This document shows, one piece after another, positions 15,801 to 35,034 of a stretch of 64,000 nucleotides of DNA. A model generated the notes under the pieces. That model worked only from the letters and a program-made list of their open reading frames with translations. It was not told where the DNA came from and made no database searches. Location of the stretch: the IMG/VR virus record IMGVR_UViG_3300046692_000091, positions 124,001 through 188,000 of that record; one strand, given 5' to 3'. Position numbers and translations under genes: made by a program. Within the stretch, counting starts at the first letter, position 1, and each line of letters begins with the position of its first letter.

Positions 15801-18451
<2,651 letters not shown>

Positions 18452-28431: not shown

Positions 28432-29814
28432 ATGCTTATTCAGGAAGTGTTAGGGTTATACCACAATGCAATAGAGATGCTCAGTTCGGGTGACTCAACA
28501 GTCAAAGGTTTCATGACGTTGGGTGTCATGGGTCTGTTGGGTTATTTGGGGCGTACGATACCCCAAACAATCTGGGCGTTCATCAAACGTAACACGATTT
28601 CATCGATGACTTTCACTCGCGCAGGTTCATATTCCATGGACATGCAGAACTACGTAGAGTTCATGCGTTGGTTCTCACAATCCAAGTGGGCTAAATATGA
28701 TCGCAATCGACGTGTAACATTCGATCGGAATGACCCAGCTTTTGGACCAGGTACTGGCTTCCACTGGTTTGTTTGGAAAGGTCGTTACTTCTGGTTTAAT
28801 GTTGTCCGTTTGAATTCCTCCGGTACCGATATCGAGAAAGAAGAATTCACACTGTATACATTCGGTCGTACCACTAAACCATTCGAAGAACTGGTGGAAG
28901 AGTTCCGTATCAAGCCATGCAAGAAATCGATACGTATCTATGCCCCATCGAATGACGGTTGGAACTATCAGGGGCGACTACGGTTGGACGCTGATGAAAC
29001 ACTGATCATCGATCCAGAAGTAGAGAAAGAGTTCTTTGGTTCTATCGACTGGTATCTGGCAAACGAACCATGGTACCGTAAACGTGGATTGGCTTATAAA
29101 CACACTGTCGTGTTGCATGGTCCACCTGGTACCGGTAAGACTTCGTTGATCAAACGTGCAGCCCGGAAGTACAAGCGGGATATTCACTTCCTGAACTTGG
29201 CTACCCATGGTCGTCAGTTGACTGATCTGATGGGTAAGTTGTCGGCTGGTGACATTCTGTGCATTGAAGACTTTGATGATGTCAAGTCGTTGCACCGTCG
29301 CACTGGTCCGAAGAAGATGGAAATCGGTGAACTGGACATCGGTTCCGATAAGAAACCAGAAGCGTTGTTGATGGACTGCGAGATTCAACTCAGTACCTTC
29401 CTCAACGTTCTGCAAGGCGTTGTAGAGCTCGATGATATCATTATCGTGCTGACTACTAACCACCTGGAACTGATCGATCCAGCGGTCTACCGTCCGTCCC
29501 GTGTGAACAAACTGATCGAAGTGCTACCTCTGAAAGATCCGGAAGTTAAGCGCTATATCGACACGATGTATGATAATCCTACTTACGATCGTAATGTAAT
29601 GTACCCAGACGTTCCAGCTTCTACCCTGGCTGGTATCTTCATGGAGCACCCGAACGATCACCTGGCTTTCATTGATAAGCTAGATTCGTTGGACGACAAA
29701 TACGTCGCGGAGAACTATGCTCTACAACCAGAGCCCCCGCGCCCACCTTCCAAGAAAAATAAGGACCCTTCTCCAATAGGAGGACAGGTTCTTGAAACCG
29801 TAGAGGCAGCGTAA
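28432..29814 (+). CDS. BCS1-like membrane-anchored AAA+ ATPase
   Basis: N-terminal TM; GPPGTGKTS, IEDFD, STFLNVLQG, TTNH, DPAVYRPSR. Confidence 0.85.
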   Translation: MLIQEVLGLYHNAIEMLSSGDSTVKGFMTLGVMGLLGYLGRTIPQTIWAFIKRNTISSMTFTRAGSYSMDMQNYVEFMRWFSQSKWAKYDRNRRVTFDRNDPAFGPGTGFHWFVWKGRYFWFNVVRLNSSGTDIEKEEFTLYTFGRTTKPFEELVEEFRIKPCKKSIRIYAPSNDGWNYQGRLRLDADETLIIDPEVEKEFFGSIDWYLANEPWYRKRGLAYKHTVVLHGPPGTGKTSLIKRAARKYKRDIHFLNLATHGRQLTDLMGKLSAGDILCIEDFDDVKSLHRRTGPKKMEIGELDIGSDKKPEALLMDCEIQLSTFLNVLQGVVELDDIIIVLTTNHLELIDPAVYRPSRVNKLIEVLPLKDPEVKRYIDTMYDNPTYDRNVMYPDVPASTLAGIFMEHPNDHLAFIDKLDSLDDKYVAENYALQPEPPRPPSKKNKDPSPIGGQVLETVEAA

Positions 29815-29815
29815 C

Positions 29816-30157
29816 ATGGATAATTTTGCACGTCACAACTTCAACGTCTACCCGGAAGAGATGACCTACCACAAAGATCGCTTCTTGCAAAATGATGCTG
29901 GTTGTGCGGTAGTTACATTCGTTGGGGCTTTTCATGGCGATACCATTCTGACGAATGAAGTCGAAGTGATTGCACGTGGTGTGGAACTGGGTAAGATCGC
30001 TCGGTTCCTGGTTCGTTCAGGTGATCAGGAAACCCATCTCGACATGGATCTGACAACCTGCCGTTATGAAGCAGAAAGCAATATCAAAACCAAACTGGGT
30101 GACGTCGTACTGGTGTTCACCGCGCACTACCCAACCGAAGAAAAGGAAGCTGCATGA
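29816..30157 (+). CDS. Hypothetical protein
   Basis: 113 aa; coupled to prs-like gene. Confidence 0.8.
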   Translation: MDNFARHNFNVYPEEMTYHKDRFLQNDAGCAVVTFVGAFHGDTILTNEVEVIARGVELGKIARFLVRSGDQETHLDMDLTTCRYEAESNIKTKLGDVVLVFTAHYPTEEKEAA

Positions 30158-31092
30158 TTCGCGTTCGTTATGGTTACAGTCATAGTTCTTCGACGATGCC
30201 TGTTGAAATGAAACACATGCCGGGTGGTGAACTCCACCCAACGCTTGACACGGATCACTTGAATGCCAGCGAGTACACCATCTACGCCGACACCAAGAGC
30301 TCGGATGATCTGTTTGGTATTGCTCTGGTAGCTAACGCTATCCGCCGTAATGCCGAAGTACCAATCAAAGCACTCTCTCTGGTAATTGGTTATGTGCCTT
30401 ATGCACGCCAAGACCGTATTGTTGGTGGTGAAGGTGAGGCACTATCGATCGAAGTGATGGCCGACTTCATCAACATGCTGAACTTCGATGCAGTGATCAT
30501 TGCAGATCCCCACAGCGATACAACTCCGGCTTTGATCCGTAATGCTAAGGTCATGTCCCAGGAAATGATCTTCAGTGAATTCCTGATCCGCGAAACGGCA
30601 GACTTCGATACCCGTGAGATTGCTTACGTGCCATCTGAGTACATCCTGGTTTCCCCAGATGCTGGTGCGATCAAGAAGACCGAGAAGCTGGCTACTAAGT
30701 TCGGCTTTAAAGGTGTAGCGTACGCTAACAAAACACGCAATACCCGTACCGGTAAGATCACTGGTTGTACTGTGGACCGATTGGTTTTGGATGGTGAACC
30801 AGCAATGATAAGTCAACTACAAGGCGAGAAGCTTTTAGTAGTTGACGATATCTGTGATGGTGGTTATACATTTATCCAATTGGCCGAAGTGTTGAATACC
30901 TACAGCCCAGCTAGTTTGGAACTGTACGTCACTCACGGTATCTTCTCTAAAGGTCTCGAGCCGTTGTATAAAGCGGGTTACACTCGTGTTGTTACTACCA
31001 ATGCTTATGGCATGGAAGGTAGCACTGAGCTGTATGCGCTTGAGAAAGAAGAAAAGAAAGCACTCAAATTCGTAAAAATCGATATTGCCTAA
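30154..31092 (+). CDS. prs: Ribose-phosphate pyrophosphokinase-like protein (candidate Adps of NARP1)
   Basis: YVPYARQDR, DPHS, VSPDAGA, VVDDICDGGYTF, THGIFS. Confidence 0.9.
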   Translation: MIRVRYGYSHSSSTMPVEMKHMPGGELHPTLDTDHLNASEYTIYADTKSSDDLFGIALVANAIRRNAEVPIKALSLVIGYVPYARQDRIVGGEGEALSIEVMADFINMLNFDAVIIADPHSDTTPALIRNAKVMSQEMIFSEFLIRETADFDTREIAYVPSEYILVSPDAGAIKKTEKLATKFGFKGVAYANKTRNTRTGKITGCTVDRLVLDGEPAMISQLQGEKLLVVDDICDGGYTFIQLAEVLNTYSPASLELYVTHGIFSKGLEPLYKAGYTRVVTTNAYGMEGSTELYALEKEEKKALKFVKIDIA

Positions 31093-31101
31093 GGATTCAA
31101 A

Positions 31102-32916
31102 ATGTCAATGTTTCTCAACGCTGGTACCGCTACTGACTTCTACAAACCTGGCCACGGTCCACTGTATCCAGAAGGCACTACCCGTAAGTACTCCAACTTC
31201 ACCCCACGCTCGGCGAAGAACTTCCTGCGTTCCAAAAGCTGCTCGGCTTACTATGATAACAAAGTAGTAAACTTCGGCCTGTATGGTACCTGGCAAGAAC
31301 TGGTTGACCTGTGGGATAAAACCTTCTTCCAAGTTTCGAAGAAGAAAGCAATCGCCTTCATCAAACGTCGTTTTGATAATGGCACTGGTCCTGATGTTAT
31401 CACAACTGCTCAAATCGCTGCACTCCACGATGTCGGCTTCCTGCCGGTAACTGTGTTGTCCATCGAAGAAGGTAACCGTGTCGATATCGGCATTCCTCTG
31501 TGGGTTATCTATAACTCCGAAGAATACCCAGAACACTACTGGCTGGTTAACTACCTGGAAACCATCACCAGTTCGTACAACTGGCAGTCGATCACCAACG
31601 CAACCATCGCCTACGAATATCGTCGTCTGTGCGAGATCTGGGCTGCTAAGACCTGTGATAACAATGACCACGTTAAAATCCAAGGTCATGACTTCTCGTT
31701 CCGTGGCATGCCTGGTCCAGAAGCTGCTGGTCGTTCTAACGCGGGCCACTTGGCTTCGTTCTGGGGTACTGATACTATCCCGGCAATCGATTACATCGAA
31801 CGCCTGTATAACGCCAACTCTGATAAAGAAGTCCTGGGTGTATCGGTTACTGCTACTGAACACGCCGTTGCTACTGCGAATATCCTGTCTCGCCTGAAGC
31901 ACAAGATCCGTGCTCTGCCTGCCGACACTGTTATCTCCGGTGAAATGATCGATCTGCTCAAACTCGAATGCGAGCGTGAGTACATCCTGGAAATCATCCT
32001 GGTAAAAGTGAAGAAGGGTATCATCTCCCTGGTTTGCGATTCCTTCGACTTCTGGAGTGTTATCGAACACGTACTGCCTTCGCTCCGTAAGGAAATCGAA
32101 AGCCGTATCGTGAACGAACTCGGTCTGGCTAAAGTAGTTGTACGTCCTGACTCGGGTAATCCGGTACACGTGATCTGTGGTTTCAAAATCATGGGTGAGT
32201 TCGCTGACATTGCTGCATTCTCGAAGCATGTCTACGACAACGGTACTTTCGAACTGGGTATGTACGAAGCTGTGAAGATTGGTGATGTTTACCATGAACT
32301 GCAGAATACTACTTGGACTAGCTGCTCTATCGAAGACTTCCTGGGTCGTGAGATGAAGCGGGTAGAAGCAATCGGTGCGATCGAATCCCTGTGGGAATCT
32401 TTCGGTGGTCACACTAACACCAAAGGCTATAAAGTACTGAACTCGTACATCGGTCTGATCTATGGTGACTCGATCACTGTTGAACGTACCGAACAGATCT
32501 TCCAACGTCTGGCTGATAAAGGCTTCGCTTCGTCGAACGTTGTTCTGGGTATCGGTTCGTTTACTTATCAGTACAACACTCGTGATACCTTCGGCATGGC
32601 CATGAAGGCAACTGCGTGTGAAGTGCAGGATGAACTGATCGAGCTGTACAAAGATCCGAAGACCGCTGCATCCAAGAAGTCCGCTAAAGGCTTCCTGCGT
32701 GTACTGAAAGACGAGAACGGCAAATATACACTCGAACAAGAAGTGGAAATGGATTGGAAAGATCTGTTCTACGGTTCGGGTGAACTGAAGCCTCTGTTCC
32801 ACAACGGTAAGTTCCAGCGTGCTGAACATTTCGGTGATGTACGTAGTCGCATTGACTCTACTTTCGTAGTAGCTAATGACGATGACGGTTTCGACCCAGT
32901 CGAAGAAGCGGCATAA
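31102..32916 (+). CDS. nadV: Nicotinamide phosphoribosyltransferase-like protein (candidate Namat of NARP1)
   Basis: TDFYKPGH, HDFSFRGM, F.GTDT, ATEH, DSFDFW, VRPDSG, LIYGDSIT, RDTFG.AMKAT. Confidence 0.92.
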   Translation: MSMFLNAGTATDFYKPGHGPLYPEGTTRKYSNFTPRSAKNFLRSKSCSAYYDNKVVNFGLYGTWQELVDLWDKTFFQVSKKKAIAFIKRRFDNGTGPDVITTAQIAALHDVGFLPVTVLSIEEGNRVDIGIPLWVIYNSEEYPEHYWLVNYLETITSSYNWQSITNATIAYEYRRLCEIWAAKTCDNNDHVKIQGHDFSFRGMPGPEAAGRSNAGHLASFWGTDTIPAIDYIERLYNANSDKEVLGVSVTATEHAVATANILSRLKHKIRALPADTVISGEMIDLLKLECEREYILEIILVKVKKGIISLVCDSFDFWSVIEHVLPSLRKEIESRIVNELGLAKVVVRPDSGNPVHVICGFKIMGEFADIAAFSKHVYDNGTFELGMYEAVKIGDVYHELQNTTWTSCSIEDFLGREMKRVEAIGAIESLWESFGGHTNTKGYKVLNSYIGLIYGDSITVERTEQIFQRLADKGFASSNVVLGIGSFTYQYNTRDTFGMAMKATACEVQDELIELYKDPKTAASKKSAKGFLRVLKDENGKYTLEQEVEMDWKDLFYGSGELKPLFHNGKFQRAEHFGDVRSRIDSTFVVANDDDGFDPVEEAA

Positions 32917-32970: not shown

Positions 32971-33585
32971 ATGATCTGCTGTCAAAATTGTAATGTTGAT
33001 GCTGTTAGTCCTCAGCGTTCAGAAGTAAATGCATCCATCCGCTTTGATGCAACTGATGCCCCTAATCCAGCATTGATCGGCAAGAATCTCCGCTTGGTTA
33101 ATGGTACGTTGTTCACTCGTGATGGCGCAATGCCTAAAGGCGGCTTTCGTGTTGAGATGATTACTACTGGTGCAAAGCATCGTATCTCGATCTACCGCAT
33201 GACCTTACCTTTCGATGAGTTGATGCTGATCCTACAATTCGATGAAACGGTTGGTGAAGTACAAGTCAGACAGTTCGCAAATGTCGAACCACTGGTACAA
33301 CTCCATCTGGAGATGACCAAAGAATTCGTGGAAGAAAAACTCTACCAAGAACTAGCACCATTGGTATACCGTGTACCTTCACGTGCAGCTATGCTCCAAC
33401 TCTTCGAGCATCGTAAATTGTCAGGCCGTGTTCTGGAGGCAGCCGAAGTACAAATCCAAACCAATAACCGGACAGGTAACTGGCCGATGATGGCAATATT
33501 CCATCAGAATCTCCTCGGTGTTGAGACGCGAAATTCTCCTGTTATTAATATTCCTGATTGGAGAAATAACGCAGCTTGGCAATAA
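32971..33585 (+). CDS. Hypothetical protein
   Basis: 204 aa, SD ggag. Confidence 0.8.
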   Translation: MICCQNCNVDAVSPQRSEVNASIRFDATDAPNPALIGKNLRLVNGTLFTRDGAMPKGGFRVEMITTGAKHRISIYRMTLPFDELMLILQFDETVGEVQVRQFANVEPLVQLHLEMTKEFVEEKLYQELAPLVYRVPSRAAMLQLFEHRKLSGRVLEAAEVQIQTNNRTGNWPMMAIFHQNLLGVETRNSPVINIPDWRNNAAWQ

Positions 33586-33609: not shown

Positions 33610-35034
33610 ATGAAAGAATATTTGTCCATGCAGCAAGAAGTACTGGAACGAGGCGTGCCGAAAGGTGACCGCACTGGTACTGGTACTATTTCTTGCCCTG
33701 GTGTTAGTCGTGTATATGACATCAGCGATAATCGGTTGGCTGCAACGTCTACCAAAAAGATTCACATCAAGACAGGTCAGGTTGAAGAAGACTGGATGTT
33801 GTCAGGTGATACCCGACTGAAGTTCCTGAAAGACAACAACTGCAACATCTGGGACGAATGGGTTCTGAAAGGTACCGGTATCTATCGTAATCGTACGGTC
33901 AAAGAAATGCGTCGAGTTTATACTCGTAACCATTTCGGTTGGTCTAAACCAGTCGTTCTAGATATCGGTTGTGACCCAGAGAACACAGAAGTCTGGAATA
34001 AGGTTGCAGAAACAGAGGACTTCGAAGTCTGGGCATGGGACGTAACTAAAGGCATCGGCATTAAACCACATCATGGCATTCGGGATAAGTCCAAGGATAG
34101 TCTGAATTGGATGAACTGGCAAAACCCAGAAGATCCTATTTGGCTTCAGTTCTACTCTGCTCTGGGTATCTCTGATCTGGAAGTAATGGACGGAGAACTC
34201 GGTAAGGTATACGGGGCAATGTTCCGTAGTATCGAAGACACCCGTATCGATAGTGGTGGGGGTGTTAATGAGAAAGAATGGACAGACCGTGGATTCTCTT
34301 GGGAAGGTATGTTAGGTGATGGCCGATCGGTGTATACGCGTAAGATCGATCAGGTTGCTAAACTACTGTATGATCTGGAGCATAACCCAGATTCTCGTCG
34401 TTTGATTCTGTGTCCATGGAACCCAGCATATGTAGATGAACAAGCATTGCCTCCTTGCCATTCATTCATCCAGTTCTGGACGCGTGAGATGACTTCCGAG
34501 CAACGTTACCATGTCTATTGTAAGCAGTATGACCGTGAGCAAAAAGAGTTGCTTGACGACATTGCTAAACGTAGTCGTGCCGACATTTATACTGCGCATG
34601 CTCCATATCCGTTGTCATGCTTTGCTGAAGTCGACGACCGTGGTACTTTCTTCGATCATTATAAGCTGCATGCTTATCTAGATGAGCTTGATGTTCCACG
34701 TCGTGCTTTGACATGCATTGTTTATATGCGGTCTAACGATGTGTTCTTGGGTGCACCGTATAACCTCACGTTCTATTCTTCACTAACGCACAAGCTGGCT
34801 CACCAGTTTAACATGTACGGTGAGAAACTGGTTCACTTCGTAGGTGATGCACATATCTACCAGAACCATTTGGATCAAGTTGCCGAACAACAAGCTCGTA
34901 CACCTGACCGTGATATGCCTCGACTGAAGATCAATGTTCCGAAAGGTACTTCGATTCTCGACATGACGTTCCAAGATCTGGAAGTGATCGGTTATAACCC
35001 ACAGCCTGCTATTGAAGCACCTGTAGCTGTTTAA
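33610..35034 (+). CDS. thyA: Thymidylate synthase with two large insertions
   Basis: DRTGTGT, IWDEW, ELGKVYG, SRRLI...WNP, LPPCH, RSNDVFLGAPYN, GDAHIY.NH. Confidence 0.95.
   Translation: MKEYLSMQQEVLERGVPKGDRTGTGTISCPGVSRVYDISDNRLAATSTKKIHIKTGQVEEDWMLSGDTRLKFLKDNNCNIWDEWVLKGTGIYRNRTVKEMRRVYTRNHFGWSKPVVLDIGCDPENTEVWNKVAETEDFEVWAWDVTKGIGIKPHHGIRDKSKDSLNWMNWQNPEDPIWLQFYSALGISDLEVMDGELGKVYGAMFRSIEDTRIDSGGGVNEKEWTDRGFSWEGMLGDGRSVYTRKIDQVAKLLYDLEHNPDSRRLILCPWNPAYVDEQALPPCHSFIQFWTREMTSEQRYHVYCKQYDREQKELLDDIAKRSRADIYTAHAPYPLSCFAEVDDRGTFFDHYKLHAYLDELDVPRRALTCIVYMRSNDVFLGAPYNLTFYSSLTHKLAHQFNMYGEKLVHFVGDAHIYQNHLDQVAEQQARTPDRDMPRLKINVPKGTSILDMTFQDLEVIGYNPQPAIEAPVAV

What the first reader, a model, noticed from the sequence alone, without database searches (positions are those of the whole stretch)
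30154..32916. Adjacent Prs-like and Nampt-like genes: NARP1-type NAD+ reconstitution (anti-defence)
Seen: Prs-like and Nampt-like genes 9 nt apart, with no NMN adenylyltransferase recognisable in this window. Known: in NARP1 a Prs homologue (Adps) makes ADPR-PP and a Nampt homologue (Namat) converts it with nicotinamide to NAD+, countering NAD-depleting defences such as Thoeris, DSR and SIR2-HerA. Inference: this pair is NARP1 rather than classical salvage. That would be useful to a jumbo phage whose own DNA ligase needs NAD+.
Basis: partly seen in the sequence, partly recalled or inferred. Interest (0 to 1): 0.6.

Follow-up and report, generated by a model that had tools for sequence, protein, structure and literature searches.

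The report
NARP1 NAD+ rebuilding pair, jumbo phage

Summary
A 312-aa Prs-like ORF (30154..31092, +) and a 604-aa Nampt-like ORF (31102..32916, +) lie 9 nt apart, each with a Shine-Dalgarno site.

The NARP1 reading is supported by every sequence test available:
- **Nampt-like protein:** its best solved-structure match is the validated SpbetaL1 Namat. It carries the Namat clamp motif GSFTYQYNTRD. It keeps 18 of 20 NAD-contact residues, and the two changes are those of validated Bas63 Namat. It falls in the Adps-associated clade, apart from KVP40 Nampt.
- **Prs-like protein:** it lies outside the canonical Prs clade and scores below the PRPS family cut-off. It has the Adps donor loop DDICDGG and the catalytic Lys.
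- **Whole genome (314,814 bp, CheckV 100%):** no Nmnat, NadR or Nudix was found. It does encode an NAD-dependent LigA and no ATP-dependent DNA ligase.

The pair is syntenic in the Chimalliviridae phage Psa21, whose two genes are already in the tables of the original NARP1 paper. The extra length comes from two insertions that validated Bas63 Namat also has.

Activity and counter-defence are inferred by homology only. Verdict: a new member of a known kind, of low interest.

The parts
30154..31092 (+). adps-like gene (312 aa; P0002): PRPS-fold enzyme predicted to convert ADP-ribose + ATP into ADPR-PP + AMP
   Evidence: ORF. TIGR01251 99.4 bits, below the 113 cut-off. phrog_619 E 1e-73. Lies outside the canonical Prs clade. 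37% identical to validated ICP1 Adps and 34% to validated Bas63 Adps, against 26% to E. coli Prs. AlphaFold model pLDDT 93.3 with a PRPS fold, TM about 0.64.
30730..30732 (+). codon of Lys193, equivalent to the catalytic Lys of Adps (ICP1 K185, SpbetaL1 K162)
   Evidence: Alignment mapping. K185A (PMC13586617) and K162A (Osterman Table S3) inactivate the validated enzymes.
30844..30873 (+). Adps-type PP (donor) loop, residues 231-240, DDICDGGYTF
   Evidence: ICP1 has DDICDGAASF, Bas63 DDICDGGRTF, E. coli Prs DDMIDTGGTL. DDIC-D-GG is invariant or nearly invariant in 93 relatives.
31093..31101 (+). 9-nt intergenic spacer carrying the Shine-Dalgarno sequence (AAGGA) of the second gene
   Evidence: Sequence read.
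31102..32916 (+). namat-like gene (604 aa; P0001): Nampt-fold enzyme predicted to join ADPR-PP and nicotinamide into NAD+
   Evidence: PRK09198 442.5 bits. Best PDB sequence match is 9W5X/9W5W SpbetaL1 Namat at E 1e-104, against human NAMPT at 1e-44. Best fold match is 9W5X, TM 0.94 on the target. Falls in the Adps-associated clade with 100% support.
31210..31260 (+). selectivity-clamp loop (SCL, beta1-beta2 loop), residues about 37-53; third residue Lys39, aromatic Phe41
   Evidence: The rule in PMC12774641 is that the third SCL residue is Arg, Lys or Tyr. Among 74 relatives it is R in 40, K in 33 and H in 1. F or Y at position 41 occurs in 72 of 74.
31882..31989 (+). insertion 1 relative to SpbetaL1 Namat (residues about 261-296); modelled as part of a helical hairpin
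   Evidence: Clade median 37 aa. Validated Bas63 Namat has 24 aa at the same site.
32185..32370 (+). insertion 2 relative to SpbetaL1 Namat (residues about 362-423); modelled as a small alpha/beta subdomain
   Evidence: Clade median 62 aa. Validated Bas63 Namat has 86 aa at the same site. pLDDT is mostly above 89 in the model.
32554..32586 (+). selectivity-clamp helix motif (SCH), residues 485-495, GSFTYQYNTRD; Phe487 and Tyr491 are the adenine-stacking positions
   Evidence: It fits the consensus GS-X-phi-X-phi-X-phi-TRD of PMC12774641 exactly. KVP40 Nampt has GGGLLQQLDRD and bacterial genes without an Adps neighbour have G[AG]xLLQ.

Best explanation
The two genes are a NARP1 module (NAD+ reconstitution pathway 1). 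When a host NADase effector (Thoeris, DSR1/2, SIR2-HerA and similar systems) cleaves NAD+ into ADP-ribose and nicotinamide, the first enzyme (Adps, a repurposed PRPP-synthetase fold) transfers the beta,gamma-pyrophosphate of ATP onto the terminal ribose of ADP-ribose, giving ADPR-PP. The second enzyme (Namat, a repurposed Nampt fold with an adenine-binding clamp) displaces that pyrophosphate with nicotinamide and gives NAD+ directly, so no NMN adenylyltransferase is needed. In this phage the rebuilt NAD+ would also feed its own NAD-dependent DNA ligase. Shown here: the gene pair, its conservation, clade membership, diagnostic motifs and residues, predicted folds, and the absence of Nmnat, NadR and Nudix. 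Inferred: the two reactions, the preference for ADPR-PP over PRPP, and the counter-defence role.
For: - **Namat side:** best PDB sequence match is validated SpbetaL1 Namat 9W5X/9W5W at E 1e-104, against NAMPT at 1e-44. Best fold match is 9W5X, TM 0.94, E 4e-53. The SCH motif GSFTYQYNTRD is present. 18 of 20 NAD-contact residues are identical, and the two changes (R40K, A362S) are shared with validated Bas63 Namat. In the tree, a 100%-supported split puts the window with all Adps-adjacent genes and away from KVP40 Nampt.
- **Adps side:** canonical Prs forms a separate 100%-supported clade on a branch of length 2.33. TIGR01251 scores 99 bits, like the bacterial Prs-like paralogues beside or near Namat-like genes (98-142) and unlike housekeeping Prs (352-422). 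R85, H120, D169, K193, D231, D232 and the ICDG loop are conserved. The C-terminus is short.
- **Context:** 9-nt gap with SD sites. No Nmnat, NadR or Nudix in the complete genome. LigA is present and no ATP-dependent DNA ligase. Synteny with Psa21 and RVTF4. The Psa21 orthologues are already tabulated as Adps and Adps-associated Namat.
- **Unbiased bacterial sample:** 5 of 5 Namat-type genes have an Adps-like neighbour and 0 of 5 Nampt-type genes do.
Against: There is no biochemical or genetic evidence for this phage or any member of its genus. Validated Namat enzymes still make NMN from PRPP in vitro (PMC12774641), so sequence alone cannot exclude some classical activity. In the SCL the residue after Lys39 is Asn, not the aromatic residue that stacks on adenine in Bas63 (K-W-F); the stacking partner here may be Phe41, but that is untested. 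ICP1 Adps residues F18 and F92, which contact the ADPR adenine, are not conserved here (S13, V90), though they are not conserved in validated Bas63 or SpbetaL1 Adps either. The window clade has its own insertions in both proteins, and their effect is unknown. No Adps structure was in the held PDB copy, so the Adps fold comparison was only with PRPS. Within the Adps-like group the tree backbone is weakly resolved.
Confidence: 0.85

Rival explanations
1. Classical nicotinamide salvage: the Prs-like enzyme makes PRPP from ribose-5-phosphate, the Nampt-like enzyme makes NMN, and a host adenylyltransferase (NadD, NadR or NadM) finishes NAD+.
For: Both proteins hit the PRPS and Nampt families. Validated Namat retains NMN synthesis from PRPP in vitro (PMC12774641). 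9KE8 HdNadV, a solved NMN-binding enzyme, is the second-closest structure.
Against: The Prs-like protein is outside the canonical Prs clade and below the family cut-off. The Nampt-like protein has the full adenine clamp, which HdNadV (Q and R at those positions), KVP40 Nampt and the bacterial genes without an Adps neighbour all lack. Phages with a KVP40-type Nampt almost always carry their own Nmnat (94%; Osterman et al.), and this genome has none.
Confidence: 0.07
2. The chemistry is NARP1, but the main role is housekeeping: keeping NAD+ high for the phage's own NAD-dependent ligase during replication of a 315-kb genome, rather than countering defence systems.
For: The genome encodes LigA and no ATP-dependent DNA ligase. 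The pair sits among nucleotide-metabolism genes such as ThyA, and RNA ligase in relatives. NARP2 raised NAD+ even without a defence system (Osterman et al.).
Against: ADP-ribose accumulates mainly when NAD+ is being cleaved, so NARP1 needs an NADase to supply its substrate. Deleting NARP1 from Bas63 and Fado gave a defence-specific phenotype (Osterman et al.). The two roles are not exclusive.
Confidence: 0.12
3. The clade-specific insertions have changed or abolished the activity, so the pair is a diverged or inactive relic.
For: Insertions of 36 and 62 aa in the Namat-like protein, and about 10 aa each before the PDAG motif and in the beta-hairpin of the Adps-like protein.
Against: All catalytic residues are intact. 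The insertions are conserved and fold confidently. Validated Bas63 Namat (593 aa) has insertions at the same two sites. Both ORFs are conserved at 85-97% identity in related metagenomic contigs.
Confidence: 0.03

Closest known systems
NARP1 of Escherichia phage Bas63 (bas63_0079 Adps, bas63_0080 Namat; Osterman et al. 2024)
   Same: Same gene order, with a short gap. Long-form Namat (593 aa against 604 aa) with insertions at the same two sites. Lys-type SCL. SCH with aromatic residues at both clamp positions. Adps PP loop DDICDGGRTF against DDICDGGYTF.
   Different: Only 36% (Namat) and 34% (Adps) identity. Bas63 has Trp after the SCL Lys where the window has Asn. The host phage is an 87-kb felixounavirus, not a 315-kb chimallivirus relative.
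NARP1 of Bacillus phage SPbetaL1 (Namat structures 9W5X/9W5W, PMC12774641)
   Same: Best PDB match by sequence and by fold. 18 of 20 NAD-contact residues are identical, and the SCH segment GIGSFTYQYNTRDTFG is identical.
   Different: SpbetaL1 Namat is 491 aa and lacks both insertions. Its SCL uses Arg40. Its Adps has the Gram-positive-type PP loop DDLSSFGGTF.
Adps of Vibrio phage ICP1 (structures in PMC13586617)
   Same: 37% identity. R87, H121, D161, K185, D212, D213 and the I-C-D-G PP-loop residues and F221 are all conserved. DPHSDxTPAL motif. Short C-terminus.
   Different: The adenine-contact residues F18 and F92 and the lid residue F223 are not conserved. The window protein has two clade-specific insertions of about 10 aa.
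Psa21 (Tepukevirus, Chimalliviridae) genes PSA21_303 and PSA21_304
   Same: Orthologues at 48% and 76% identity. The neighbourhood is identical: AAA ATPase, 113-aa ORF, Adps, Namat, about 200-aa ORF, long ThyA. They are already listed among Adps homologues and as Adps-associated Namat in Osterman Tables S1 and S2.
   Different: A different, uncultivated phage from a rhizosphere metagenome. The Adps is notably more diverged than the Namat.
NARP2 of Vibrio phage KVP40 (Nampt + NatV Nmnat-Nudix)
   Same: The second enzyme has the same superfamily fold, and the overall purpose is the same (restoring NAD+).
   Different: The window protein is only 26% identical and lies in the other clade. KVP40 lacks the clamp (GGGLLQQLDRD) and has no Adps neighbour. 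Its partner Nmnat is absent from this genome.

Membership tests
NARP1 (Adps + Namat) | The Prs-like protein belongs to the Adps clade, separate from housekeeping Prs | tested here: met
   canonical Prs (E. coli plus 5 bacteria) forms a 100%-supported clade on a branch of length 2.33, and the window groups with the Namat-adjacent proteins, including ICP1 Adps. TIGR01251 gives 99 bits against 352-422 for housekeeping Prs. The backbone within the Adps-like group is weakly resolved.
NARP1 (Adps + Namat) | Adps catalytic Lys on the beta-hairpin (ICP1 K185, SpbetaL1 K162) and conserved acceptor-site residues | tested here: met
   K193, R85, H120, D169, D231 and D232 align with K185, R87, H121, D161, D212 and D213.
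NARP1 (Adps + Namat) | Remodelled PP (donor) loop conserved among Adps homologues | tested here: met
   the window has DDICDGGYTF, Bas63 DDICDGGRTF, ICP1 DDICDGAASF and E. coli Prs DDMIDTGGTL. D231, D232, I233 and D235 are invariant, and C234, G236 and G237 are at least 90% conserved, in 93 relatives.
NARP1 (Adps + Namat) | Loss of the PRPS C-terminal alpha11-alpha12 module | tested here: met
   (predicted model only): after the last core strand (278-284) there are 28 residues holding one 5-residue helix and one 3-residue strand; the tail is similar in length to that of SpbetaL1 Adps and shorter than that of E. coli Prs. It was not superposed on an Adps structure, because none was in the held PDB copy.
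NARP1 (Adps + Namat) | The Nampt-like protein belongs to the Adps-associated Namat clade, not the Nampt (NARP2 or cellular) clade | tested here: met
   a 100%-supported split; in an unbiased sample, 5 of 5 Namat-type genes have an Adps-like neighbour and 0 of 5 Nampt-type genes do.
NARP1 (Adps + Namat) | [quoted passage not shown] | tested here: met
   GSFTYQYNTRD, with F487 and Y491.
NARP1 (Adps + Namat) | SCL with Arg, Lys or Tyr as third residue and a stacking residue (the Arg itself, or the residue after a Lys or Tyr) | tested here: inconclusive
   the third residue is K39, so that part is met. The fourth residue is Asn, not aromatic. A conserved aromatic residue (F41; 72 of 74 relatives) follows one position later. 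Whether it stacks on adenine would need a dimer-ligand structure.
NARP1 (Adps + Namat) | Intact Nampt-like catalytic core (NAM-stacking Phe and Tyr, Asp215, Arg306, catalytic His) | tested here: met
   Y14, F198, R201, D224, R348, D350 and H254 (in the TEH motif) are all conserved.
NARP1 (Adps + Namat) | The two genes lie next to each other (97% of the Adps clade has a Namat in the immediate vicinity; annotated as within ten genes) | tested here: met
   9-nt gap, same strand; the same holds in Psa21 and RVTF4.
NARP1 (Adps + Namat) | No Nmnat in the same phage (NARP1 and NARP2 were not found together) | tested here: met
   on a genome that CheckV estimates as 100% complete.
NARP1 (Adps + Namat) | Enzymology: ADPR + ATP gives ADPR-PP; ADPR-PP + nicotinamide gives NAD+, with preference over PRPP | not testable with these tools
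   Needs purified proteins and LC-MS.
NARP1 (Adps + Namat) | Rescue of phage or cells from NAD+-depleting defence systems | not testable with these tools
   Needs plaque or growth assays.
NARP2 (KVP40-type Nampt + Nmnat) | Nampt of the KVP40 clade without an adenine clamp | tested here: not met
NARP2 (KVP40-type Nampt + Nmnat) | Nmnat encoded in the same genome | tested here: not met
   The same search finds two PF01467 ORFs in KVP40.
Canonical ribose-phosphate diphosphokinase (TIGR01251) | Score above the curated family cut-off | tested here: not met
   99.4 bits against a 113-bit cut-off. All equivalog models fall far below their cut-offs.
NARP3 (PnuC-like transporter + NadR-like enzyme) | NadR-like bifunctional enzyme in the genome | tested here: not met
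   no TIGR01526 match. PnuC was not searched.

The most novel reading that the evidence does not exclude
In nucleus-forming jumbo phages (Chimalliviridae relatives), the clade-specific additions to NARP1 may adapt the pathway to the compartmentalised infection. These additions are a helical hairpin and a roughly 60-aa alpha/beta subdomain on Namat, plus two roughly 10-aa insertions in Adps. They could, for example, control localisation relative to the phage nucleus or couple NAD+ supply to the phage LigA, beyond plain counter-defence. Nothing here tests this. It is only not excluded.
Probability: 0.07. Interest if true: 0.5.

Novelty: new member of a known kind. Interest (0 to 1): 0.18.

Why it matters
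The result mainly matters for annotation. These two genes should be named adps and namat (NARP1), not ribose-phosphate pyrophosphokinase and nicotinamide phosphoribosyltransferase as in the related GenBank records. It predicts that this rhizosphere jumbo phage and its Psa21-like relatives, which are considered for biocontrol of Pseudomonas syringae, resist NAD+-depleting defences such as Thoeris, DSR and SIR2-HerA. It also gives a worked checklist for telling NARP1 from classical salvage by sequence: the SCH clamp residues, the DDICDGG loop, a sub-threshold PRPS score, an Adps neighbour, and absence of Nmnat. No new biology is revealed.

Tried and rejected
- **Flanking ORFs** (113 aa at 29816..30157, overlapping the adps start by 4 nt, and 204 aa at 32971..33585): no Pfam, NCBIfam or PHROG hit. 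Atlas hits were at chance level with poor models. They are conserved in Psa21 and RVTF4, but nothing links them to NARP1, so they are not included in the system.
- **Adps structures:** the ICP1 Adps structures are not in the held PDB copies, so only PRPS structures matched.
- **Expression:** The look-up of sequencing runs found no RNA run, so there is no expression evidence.
- **ICP1 F18 and F92 as family markers:** rejected, because validated Bas63 and SpbetaL1 Adps lack them too.
- **Overall similarity to Namat as a sufficient criterion:** rejected, because HdNadV (9KE8) is the second-best PDB match yet lacks the clamp aromatics.
- **The 604-aa length as unusual:** rejected, because Bas63 Namat has 593 aa with insertions at the same sites.
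- **Sampling bias:** the genome-contig scan used the SCH motif itself as a pattern, so that bacterial sample is biased. An unbiased family search was used for the conclusion.
Full report
**Observation.** The window holds two + strand ORFs exactly as reported: 30154..31092 (312 aa) and 31102..32916 (604 aa), 9 nt apart. Each start is preceded by a Shine-Dalgarno-like sequence. The first ORF matches phosphoribosyltransferase and PRPP-synthetase models, but only weakly (TIGR01251 99.4 bits, cut-off 113). The second matches the NadV/Nampt model PRK09198 above its cut-off (442.5 against 405 bits). The window is bases 124001-188000 of a 314,814-bp IMG/VR virus record that CheckV estimates as 100% complete. 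The DNA occurs in a rhizosphere metagenome.

**What the literature says defines NARP1.**
- Osterman et al. (bioRxiv 10.1101/2024.02.11.579819) showed that Adps, a Prs homologue, makes ADPR-PP from ADP-ribose and ATP, and that Namat, a Nampt homologue, joins ADPR-PP with nicotinamide to give NAD+.
- In that study Adps forms a phage-dominated clade apart from Prs, and 97% of its members have a Namat gene in the immediate vicinity. Nampt homologues in phages without Adps form a separate clade (KVP40 type, NARP2), and 94% of those phages carry an Nmnat. No phage had both pathways.
- PMC12774641 solved SpbetaL1 Namat (9W5X, 9W5W). [quoted passage not shown]
- PMC13586617 solved ICP1 Adps. It named the catalytic Lys185, the acceptor residues, a remodelled PP loop conserved in the family, and loss of the PRPS C-terminal alpha11-alpha12 module.

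**The Nampt-like protein is a Namat.**
- Its best PDB sequence matches are 9W5X and 9W5W (E 1e-104). Next comes 9KE8 (E 5e-89), and mammalian NAMPT is far behind (E 1e-44). One search confirms that 9W5X and 9W5W are the Namat entries.
- It contains GSFTYQYNTRD, an exact fit to the SCH consensus.
- I fetched the validated genes from SPbetaL1 (OQ921341.1) and Bas63 (MZ501086.1), using accessions from the paper's tables, and mapped the 20 NAD-contact residues of the crystal structure. Eighteen are identical. The two differences, R40 to K39 and A362 to S457, are the same substitutions found in validated Bas63 Namat.
- KVP40 Nampt differs at every adenine-clamp position.
- In a 55-sequence maximum-likelihood tree, a 100%-supported split separates two groups. 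One holds KVP40 Nampt, nt-1, Xoo-sp13 and the bacterial genes without a Prs-like neighbour. The other is a 47-row clade holding every gene with such a neighbour, including ICP1, a felixounavirus of the Bas63 genus, Gram-positive and actinobacterial phages, and the window.
- The AlphaFold model (pLDDT 92.7) matches 9W5X best (TM 0.94 on the target, E 4e-53).

**A caveat on similarity alone.** 9KE8 is titled HdNadV with NMN; from my own knowledge this is the Haemophilus ducreyi nicotinamide phosphoribosyltransferase. It ranks second, but it has Q and R at the two aromatic clamp positions. Overall similarity is therefore not sufficient, and the clamp residues are the discriminating feature. The window protein has them.

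**The extra length.** The protein is about 110 aa longer than SpbetaL1 Namat because of two insertions (residues about 261-296 and 362-423) and a short acidic tail. Both insertions fold confidently, as a helical hairpin and a small alpha/beta subdomain. They are typical of the clade: medians are 37 and 62 aa in 74 relatives. Validated Bas63 Namat (593 aa) has insertions of 24 and 86 aa at the same two sites. The long form is therefore no argument against function, and it is not new.

**The SCL is the one feature not fully settled.** The third residue is Lys39, as in Bas63. The next residue is Asn where Bas63 has the stacking Trp. A conserved Phe follows at position 41, aromatic in 72 of 74 relatives and also present in Bas63.

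**The Prs-like protein is an Adps.**
- It is 37% identical to ICP1 Adps and 34% to Bas63 Adps, against 26% to E. coli Prs.
- In the tree, E. coli Prs and the housekeeping Prs of five bacteria form a 100%-supported clade on a long branch (2.33). The window groups with the Namat-adjacent proteins. The backbone within that group is weakly resolved, and midpoint rooting is only for drawing.
- Each of those five bacterial genomes has a housekeeping Prs scoring 352-422 bits on TIGR01251 and a separate paralogue scoring 98-142 bits. In four genomes the paralogue falls within the fetched Namat-like locus. In Pedobacter (G005) it lies a few kb outside that locus and is interrupted by stops. The window protein, at 99 bits, is in the paralogue range.
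- Residue mapping shows R85, H120, D169, K193 (equivalent to ICP1 K185 and SpbetaL1 K162), D231, D232, I233, C234, D235, G236 and F240 conserved. The PP loop reads DDICDGGYTF, closest to Bas63 DDICDGGRTF and unlike the Prs loop DDMIDTGGTL.
- ICP1 residues F18, F92 and F223 are not conserved, but they are not conserved in Bas63 or SpbetaL1 Adps either, so I do not treat them as defining.
- The model (pLDDT 93.3) has a PRPS fold (TM about 0.64 to PRPS structures, 18-23% identity). Its tail is short and holds only a 5-residue helix and a 3-residue strand, which is consistent with loss of alpha11-alpha12.

I looked for an Nmnat elsewhere in the genome. None was found: no PF01467 match (the control rang in 14 of 14 genomes), no NadR, and no tblastn match to KVP40 NatV better than E 0.6, whereas the PF01467 search recovers two ORFs in KVP40 itself. 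There is also no Nudix hydrolase. The genome does encode an NAD-dependent LigA (242 bits on PF01653; ORF at window 16397..18451) and no ATP-dependent DNA ligase.

**Distribution and novelty.**
- The neighbourhood is syntenic in Pseudomonas phages Psa21 and RVTF4: AAA/BCS1-like ATPase, 113-aa ORF, adps, namat, about 200-aa ORF, long ThyA.
- Psa21 belongs to Tepukevirus, family Chimalliviridae.
- Close homologues at 85-97% identity occur on other contigs of about 315 kb.
- Psa21 genes MK552327_00303 and _00304, and those of the jumbo phage Phabio, are already listed in Osterman et al. Table S1 (Adps homologues) and Table S2 (Namat homologues, 'Adps-associated'). The kind, and even this lineage, is therefore already catalogued.
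- The module is also common in bacterial genomes. Of 80 loci found with Namat-type patterns, 70 have an Adps-like gene just upstream, carrying the DDICDGG and GS[YF]TYQ motifs. That scan was biased by its own pattern. I therefore took an unbiased family search of 201 Gammaproteobacteria, in which 9 genomes gave 10 loci: five of Nampt type without an Adps-like neighbour (one with a NatV-like Nmnat next door), and five of Namat type, all with an Adps-like neighbour. This agrees with the bacterial NARP1 reported in PMC12774641.

**Mechanism and confidence.** I conclude with about 0.85 confidence that the pair performs the NARP1 reactions. The counter-defence role follows from homology to validated systems. 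A supply role for the phage LigA is compatible with it and not exclusive. Classical salvage through host adenylyltransferases is unlikely (about 0.07), and loss of function is very unlikely. Everything beyond sequence, phylogeny and predicted fold is inference, and no expression data exist for this phage.

Noticed in passing
window 33610..35034 (+): The thymidylate synthase is 474 aa against a profile of about 264-320 positions. The match is split into 2-3 stretches, which implies about 150-200 aa of inserted sequence. The long form is conserved in Psa21 (PSA21_306) and RVTF4. The nature of the insert was not examined.
   Followed up: partly
window 16397..18451 (+): NAD-dependent DNA ligase (LigA type; PF01653 242 bits; 684-aa ORF). 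It is the only DNA ligase family found in the genome, with no PF01068 match.
   Followed up: yes
window 28432..29814 (+): AAA+ ATPase with a BCS1_N-like N-terminal domain (Pfam E 4e-12 for each domain; phrog_7485 E 2e-110, unknown function), two ORFs upstream of adps. It is annotated 'cell division protein FtsH' in Psa21, but no protease domain was seen.
   Followed up: partly
window 29816..30157 (+) and 32971..33585 (+): Two conserved ORFs of unknown function flank the NARP1 pair. The 113-aa one overlaps the adps start codon by 4 nt (ATGA). No family or credible Atlas match was found. They are also present in Psa21 and RVTF4.
   Followed up: partly
proteins P0136, P0170, P0203 (metagenomic Namat homologues, 891-902 aa): Some close Namat homologues carry about 300 extra residues in the middle. 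P0170 gives a weak Hint-domain hit (E 4e-4, below the cut-off), which suggests an intein inserted into namat in some jumbo-phage relatives.
   Followed up: partly
L015-L094 (bacterial loci): Adps-like and Namat-like gene pairs are common in chromosomes of Achromobacter, Acinetobacter, Chromobacterium, Duganella, Citrobacter, Kosakonia and Bacteroidota. 17 of the 80 loci also have a neighbouring Nudix-like ORF (a match to the Nudix half of KVP40 NatV only), and none has an Nmnat domain.
   Followed up: partly
L002:3796-5175 (Vibrio phage ICP1 isolate 2017_Dha_AC): The Namat homologue is annotated 'hypothetical protein' at 439 aa. The open frame lacks the N-terminal 45 or so residues (D13/Y15 region and part of the SCL) present in other Namats, although tblastn in other ICP1 isolates covers query residues 5-588. 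This suggests a mis-called start or a frameshift in this isolate.
   Followed up: no
Osterman Tables S1/S2, Pseudomonas phage Phabio (MF042360_00332 and _00336): In the jumbo phage Phabio the Adps and Namat genes are four gene numbers apart rather than adjacent, so NARP1 is not always a tight two-gene operon in jumbo phages.
   Followed up: no
L013 (Xanthomonas jumbo phage Xoo-sp13, 309 kb): This jumbo phage carries a Nampt of the KVP40/cellular type (GGKLLQ, no clamp) with no Adps-like gene in the fetched 7.4-kb locus. Jumbo phages therefore use both kinds of enzyme. Its genome was not searched for an Nmnat.
   Followed up: no
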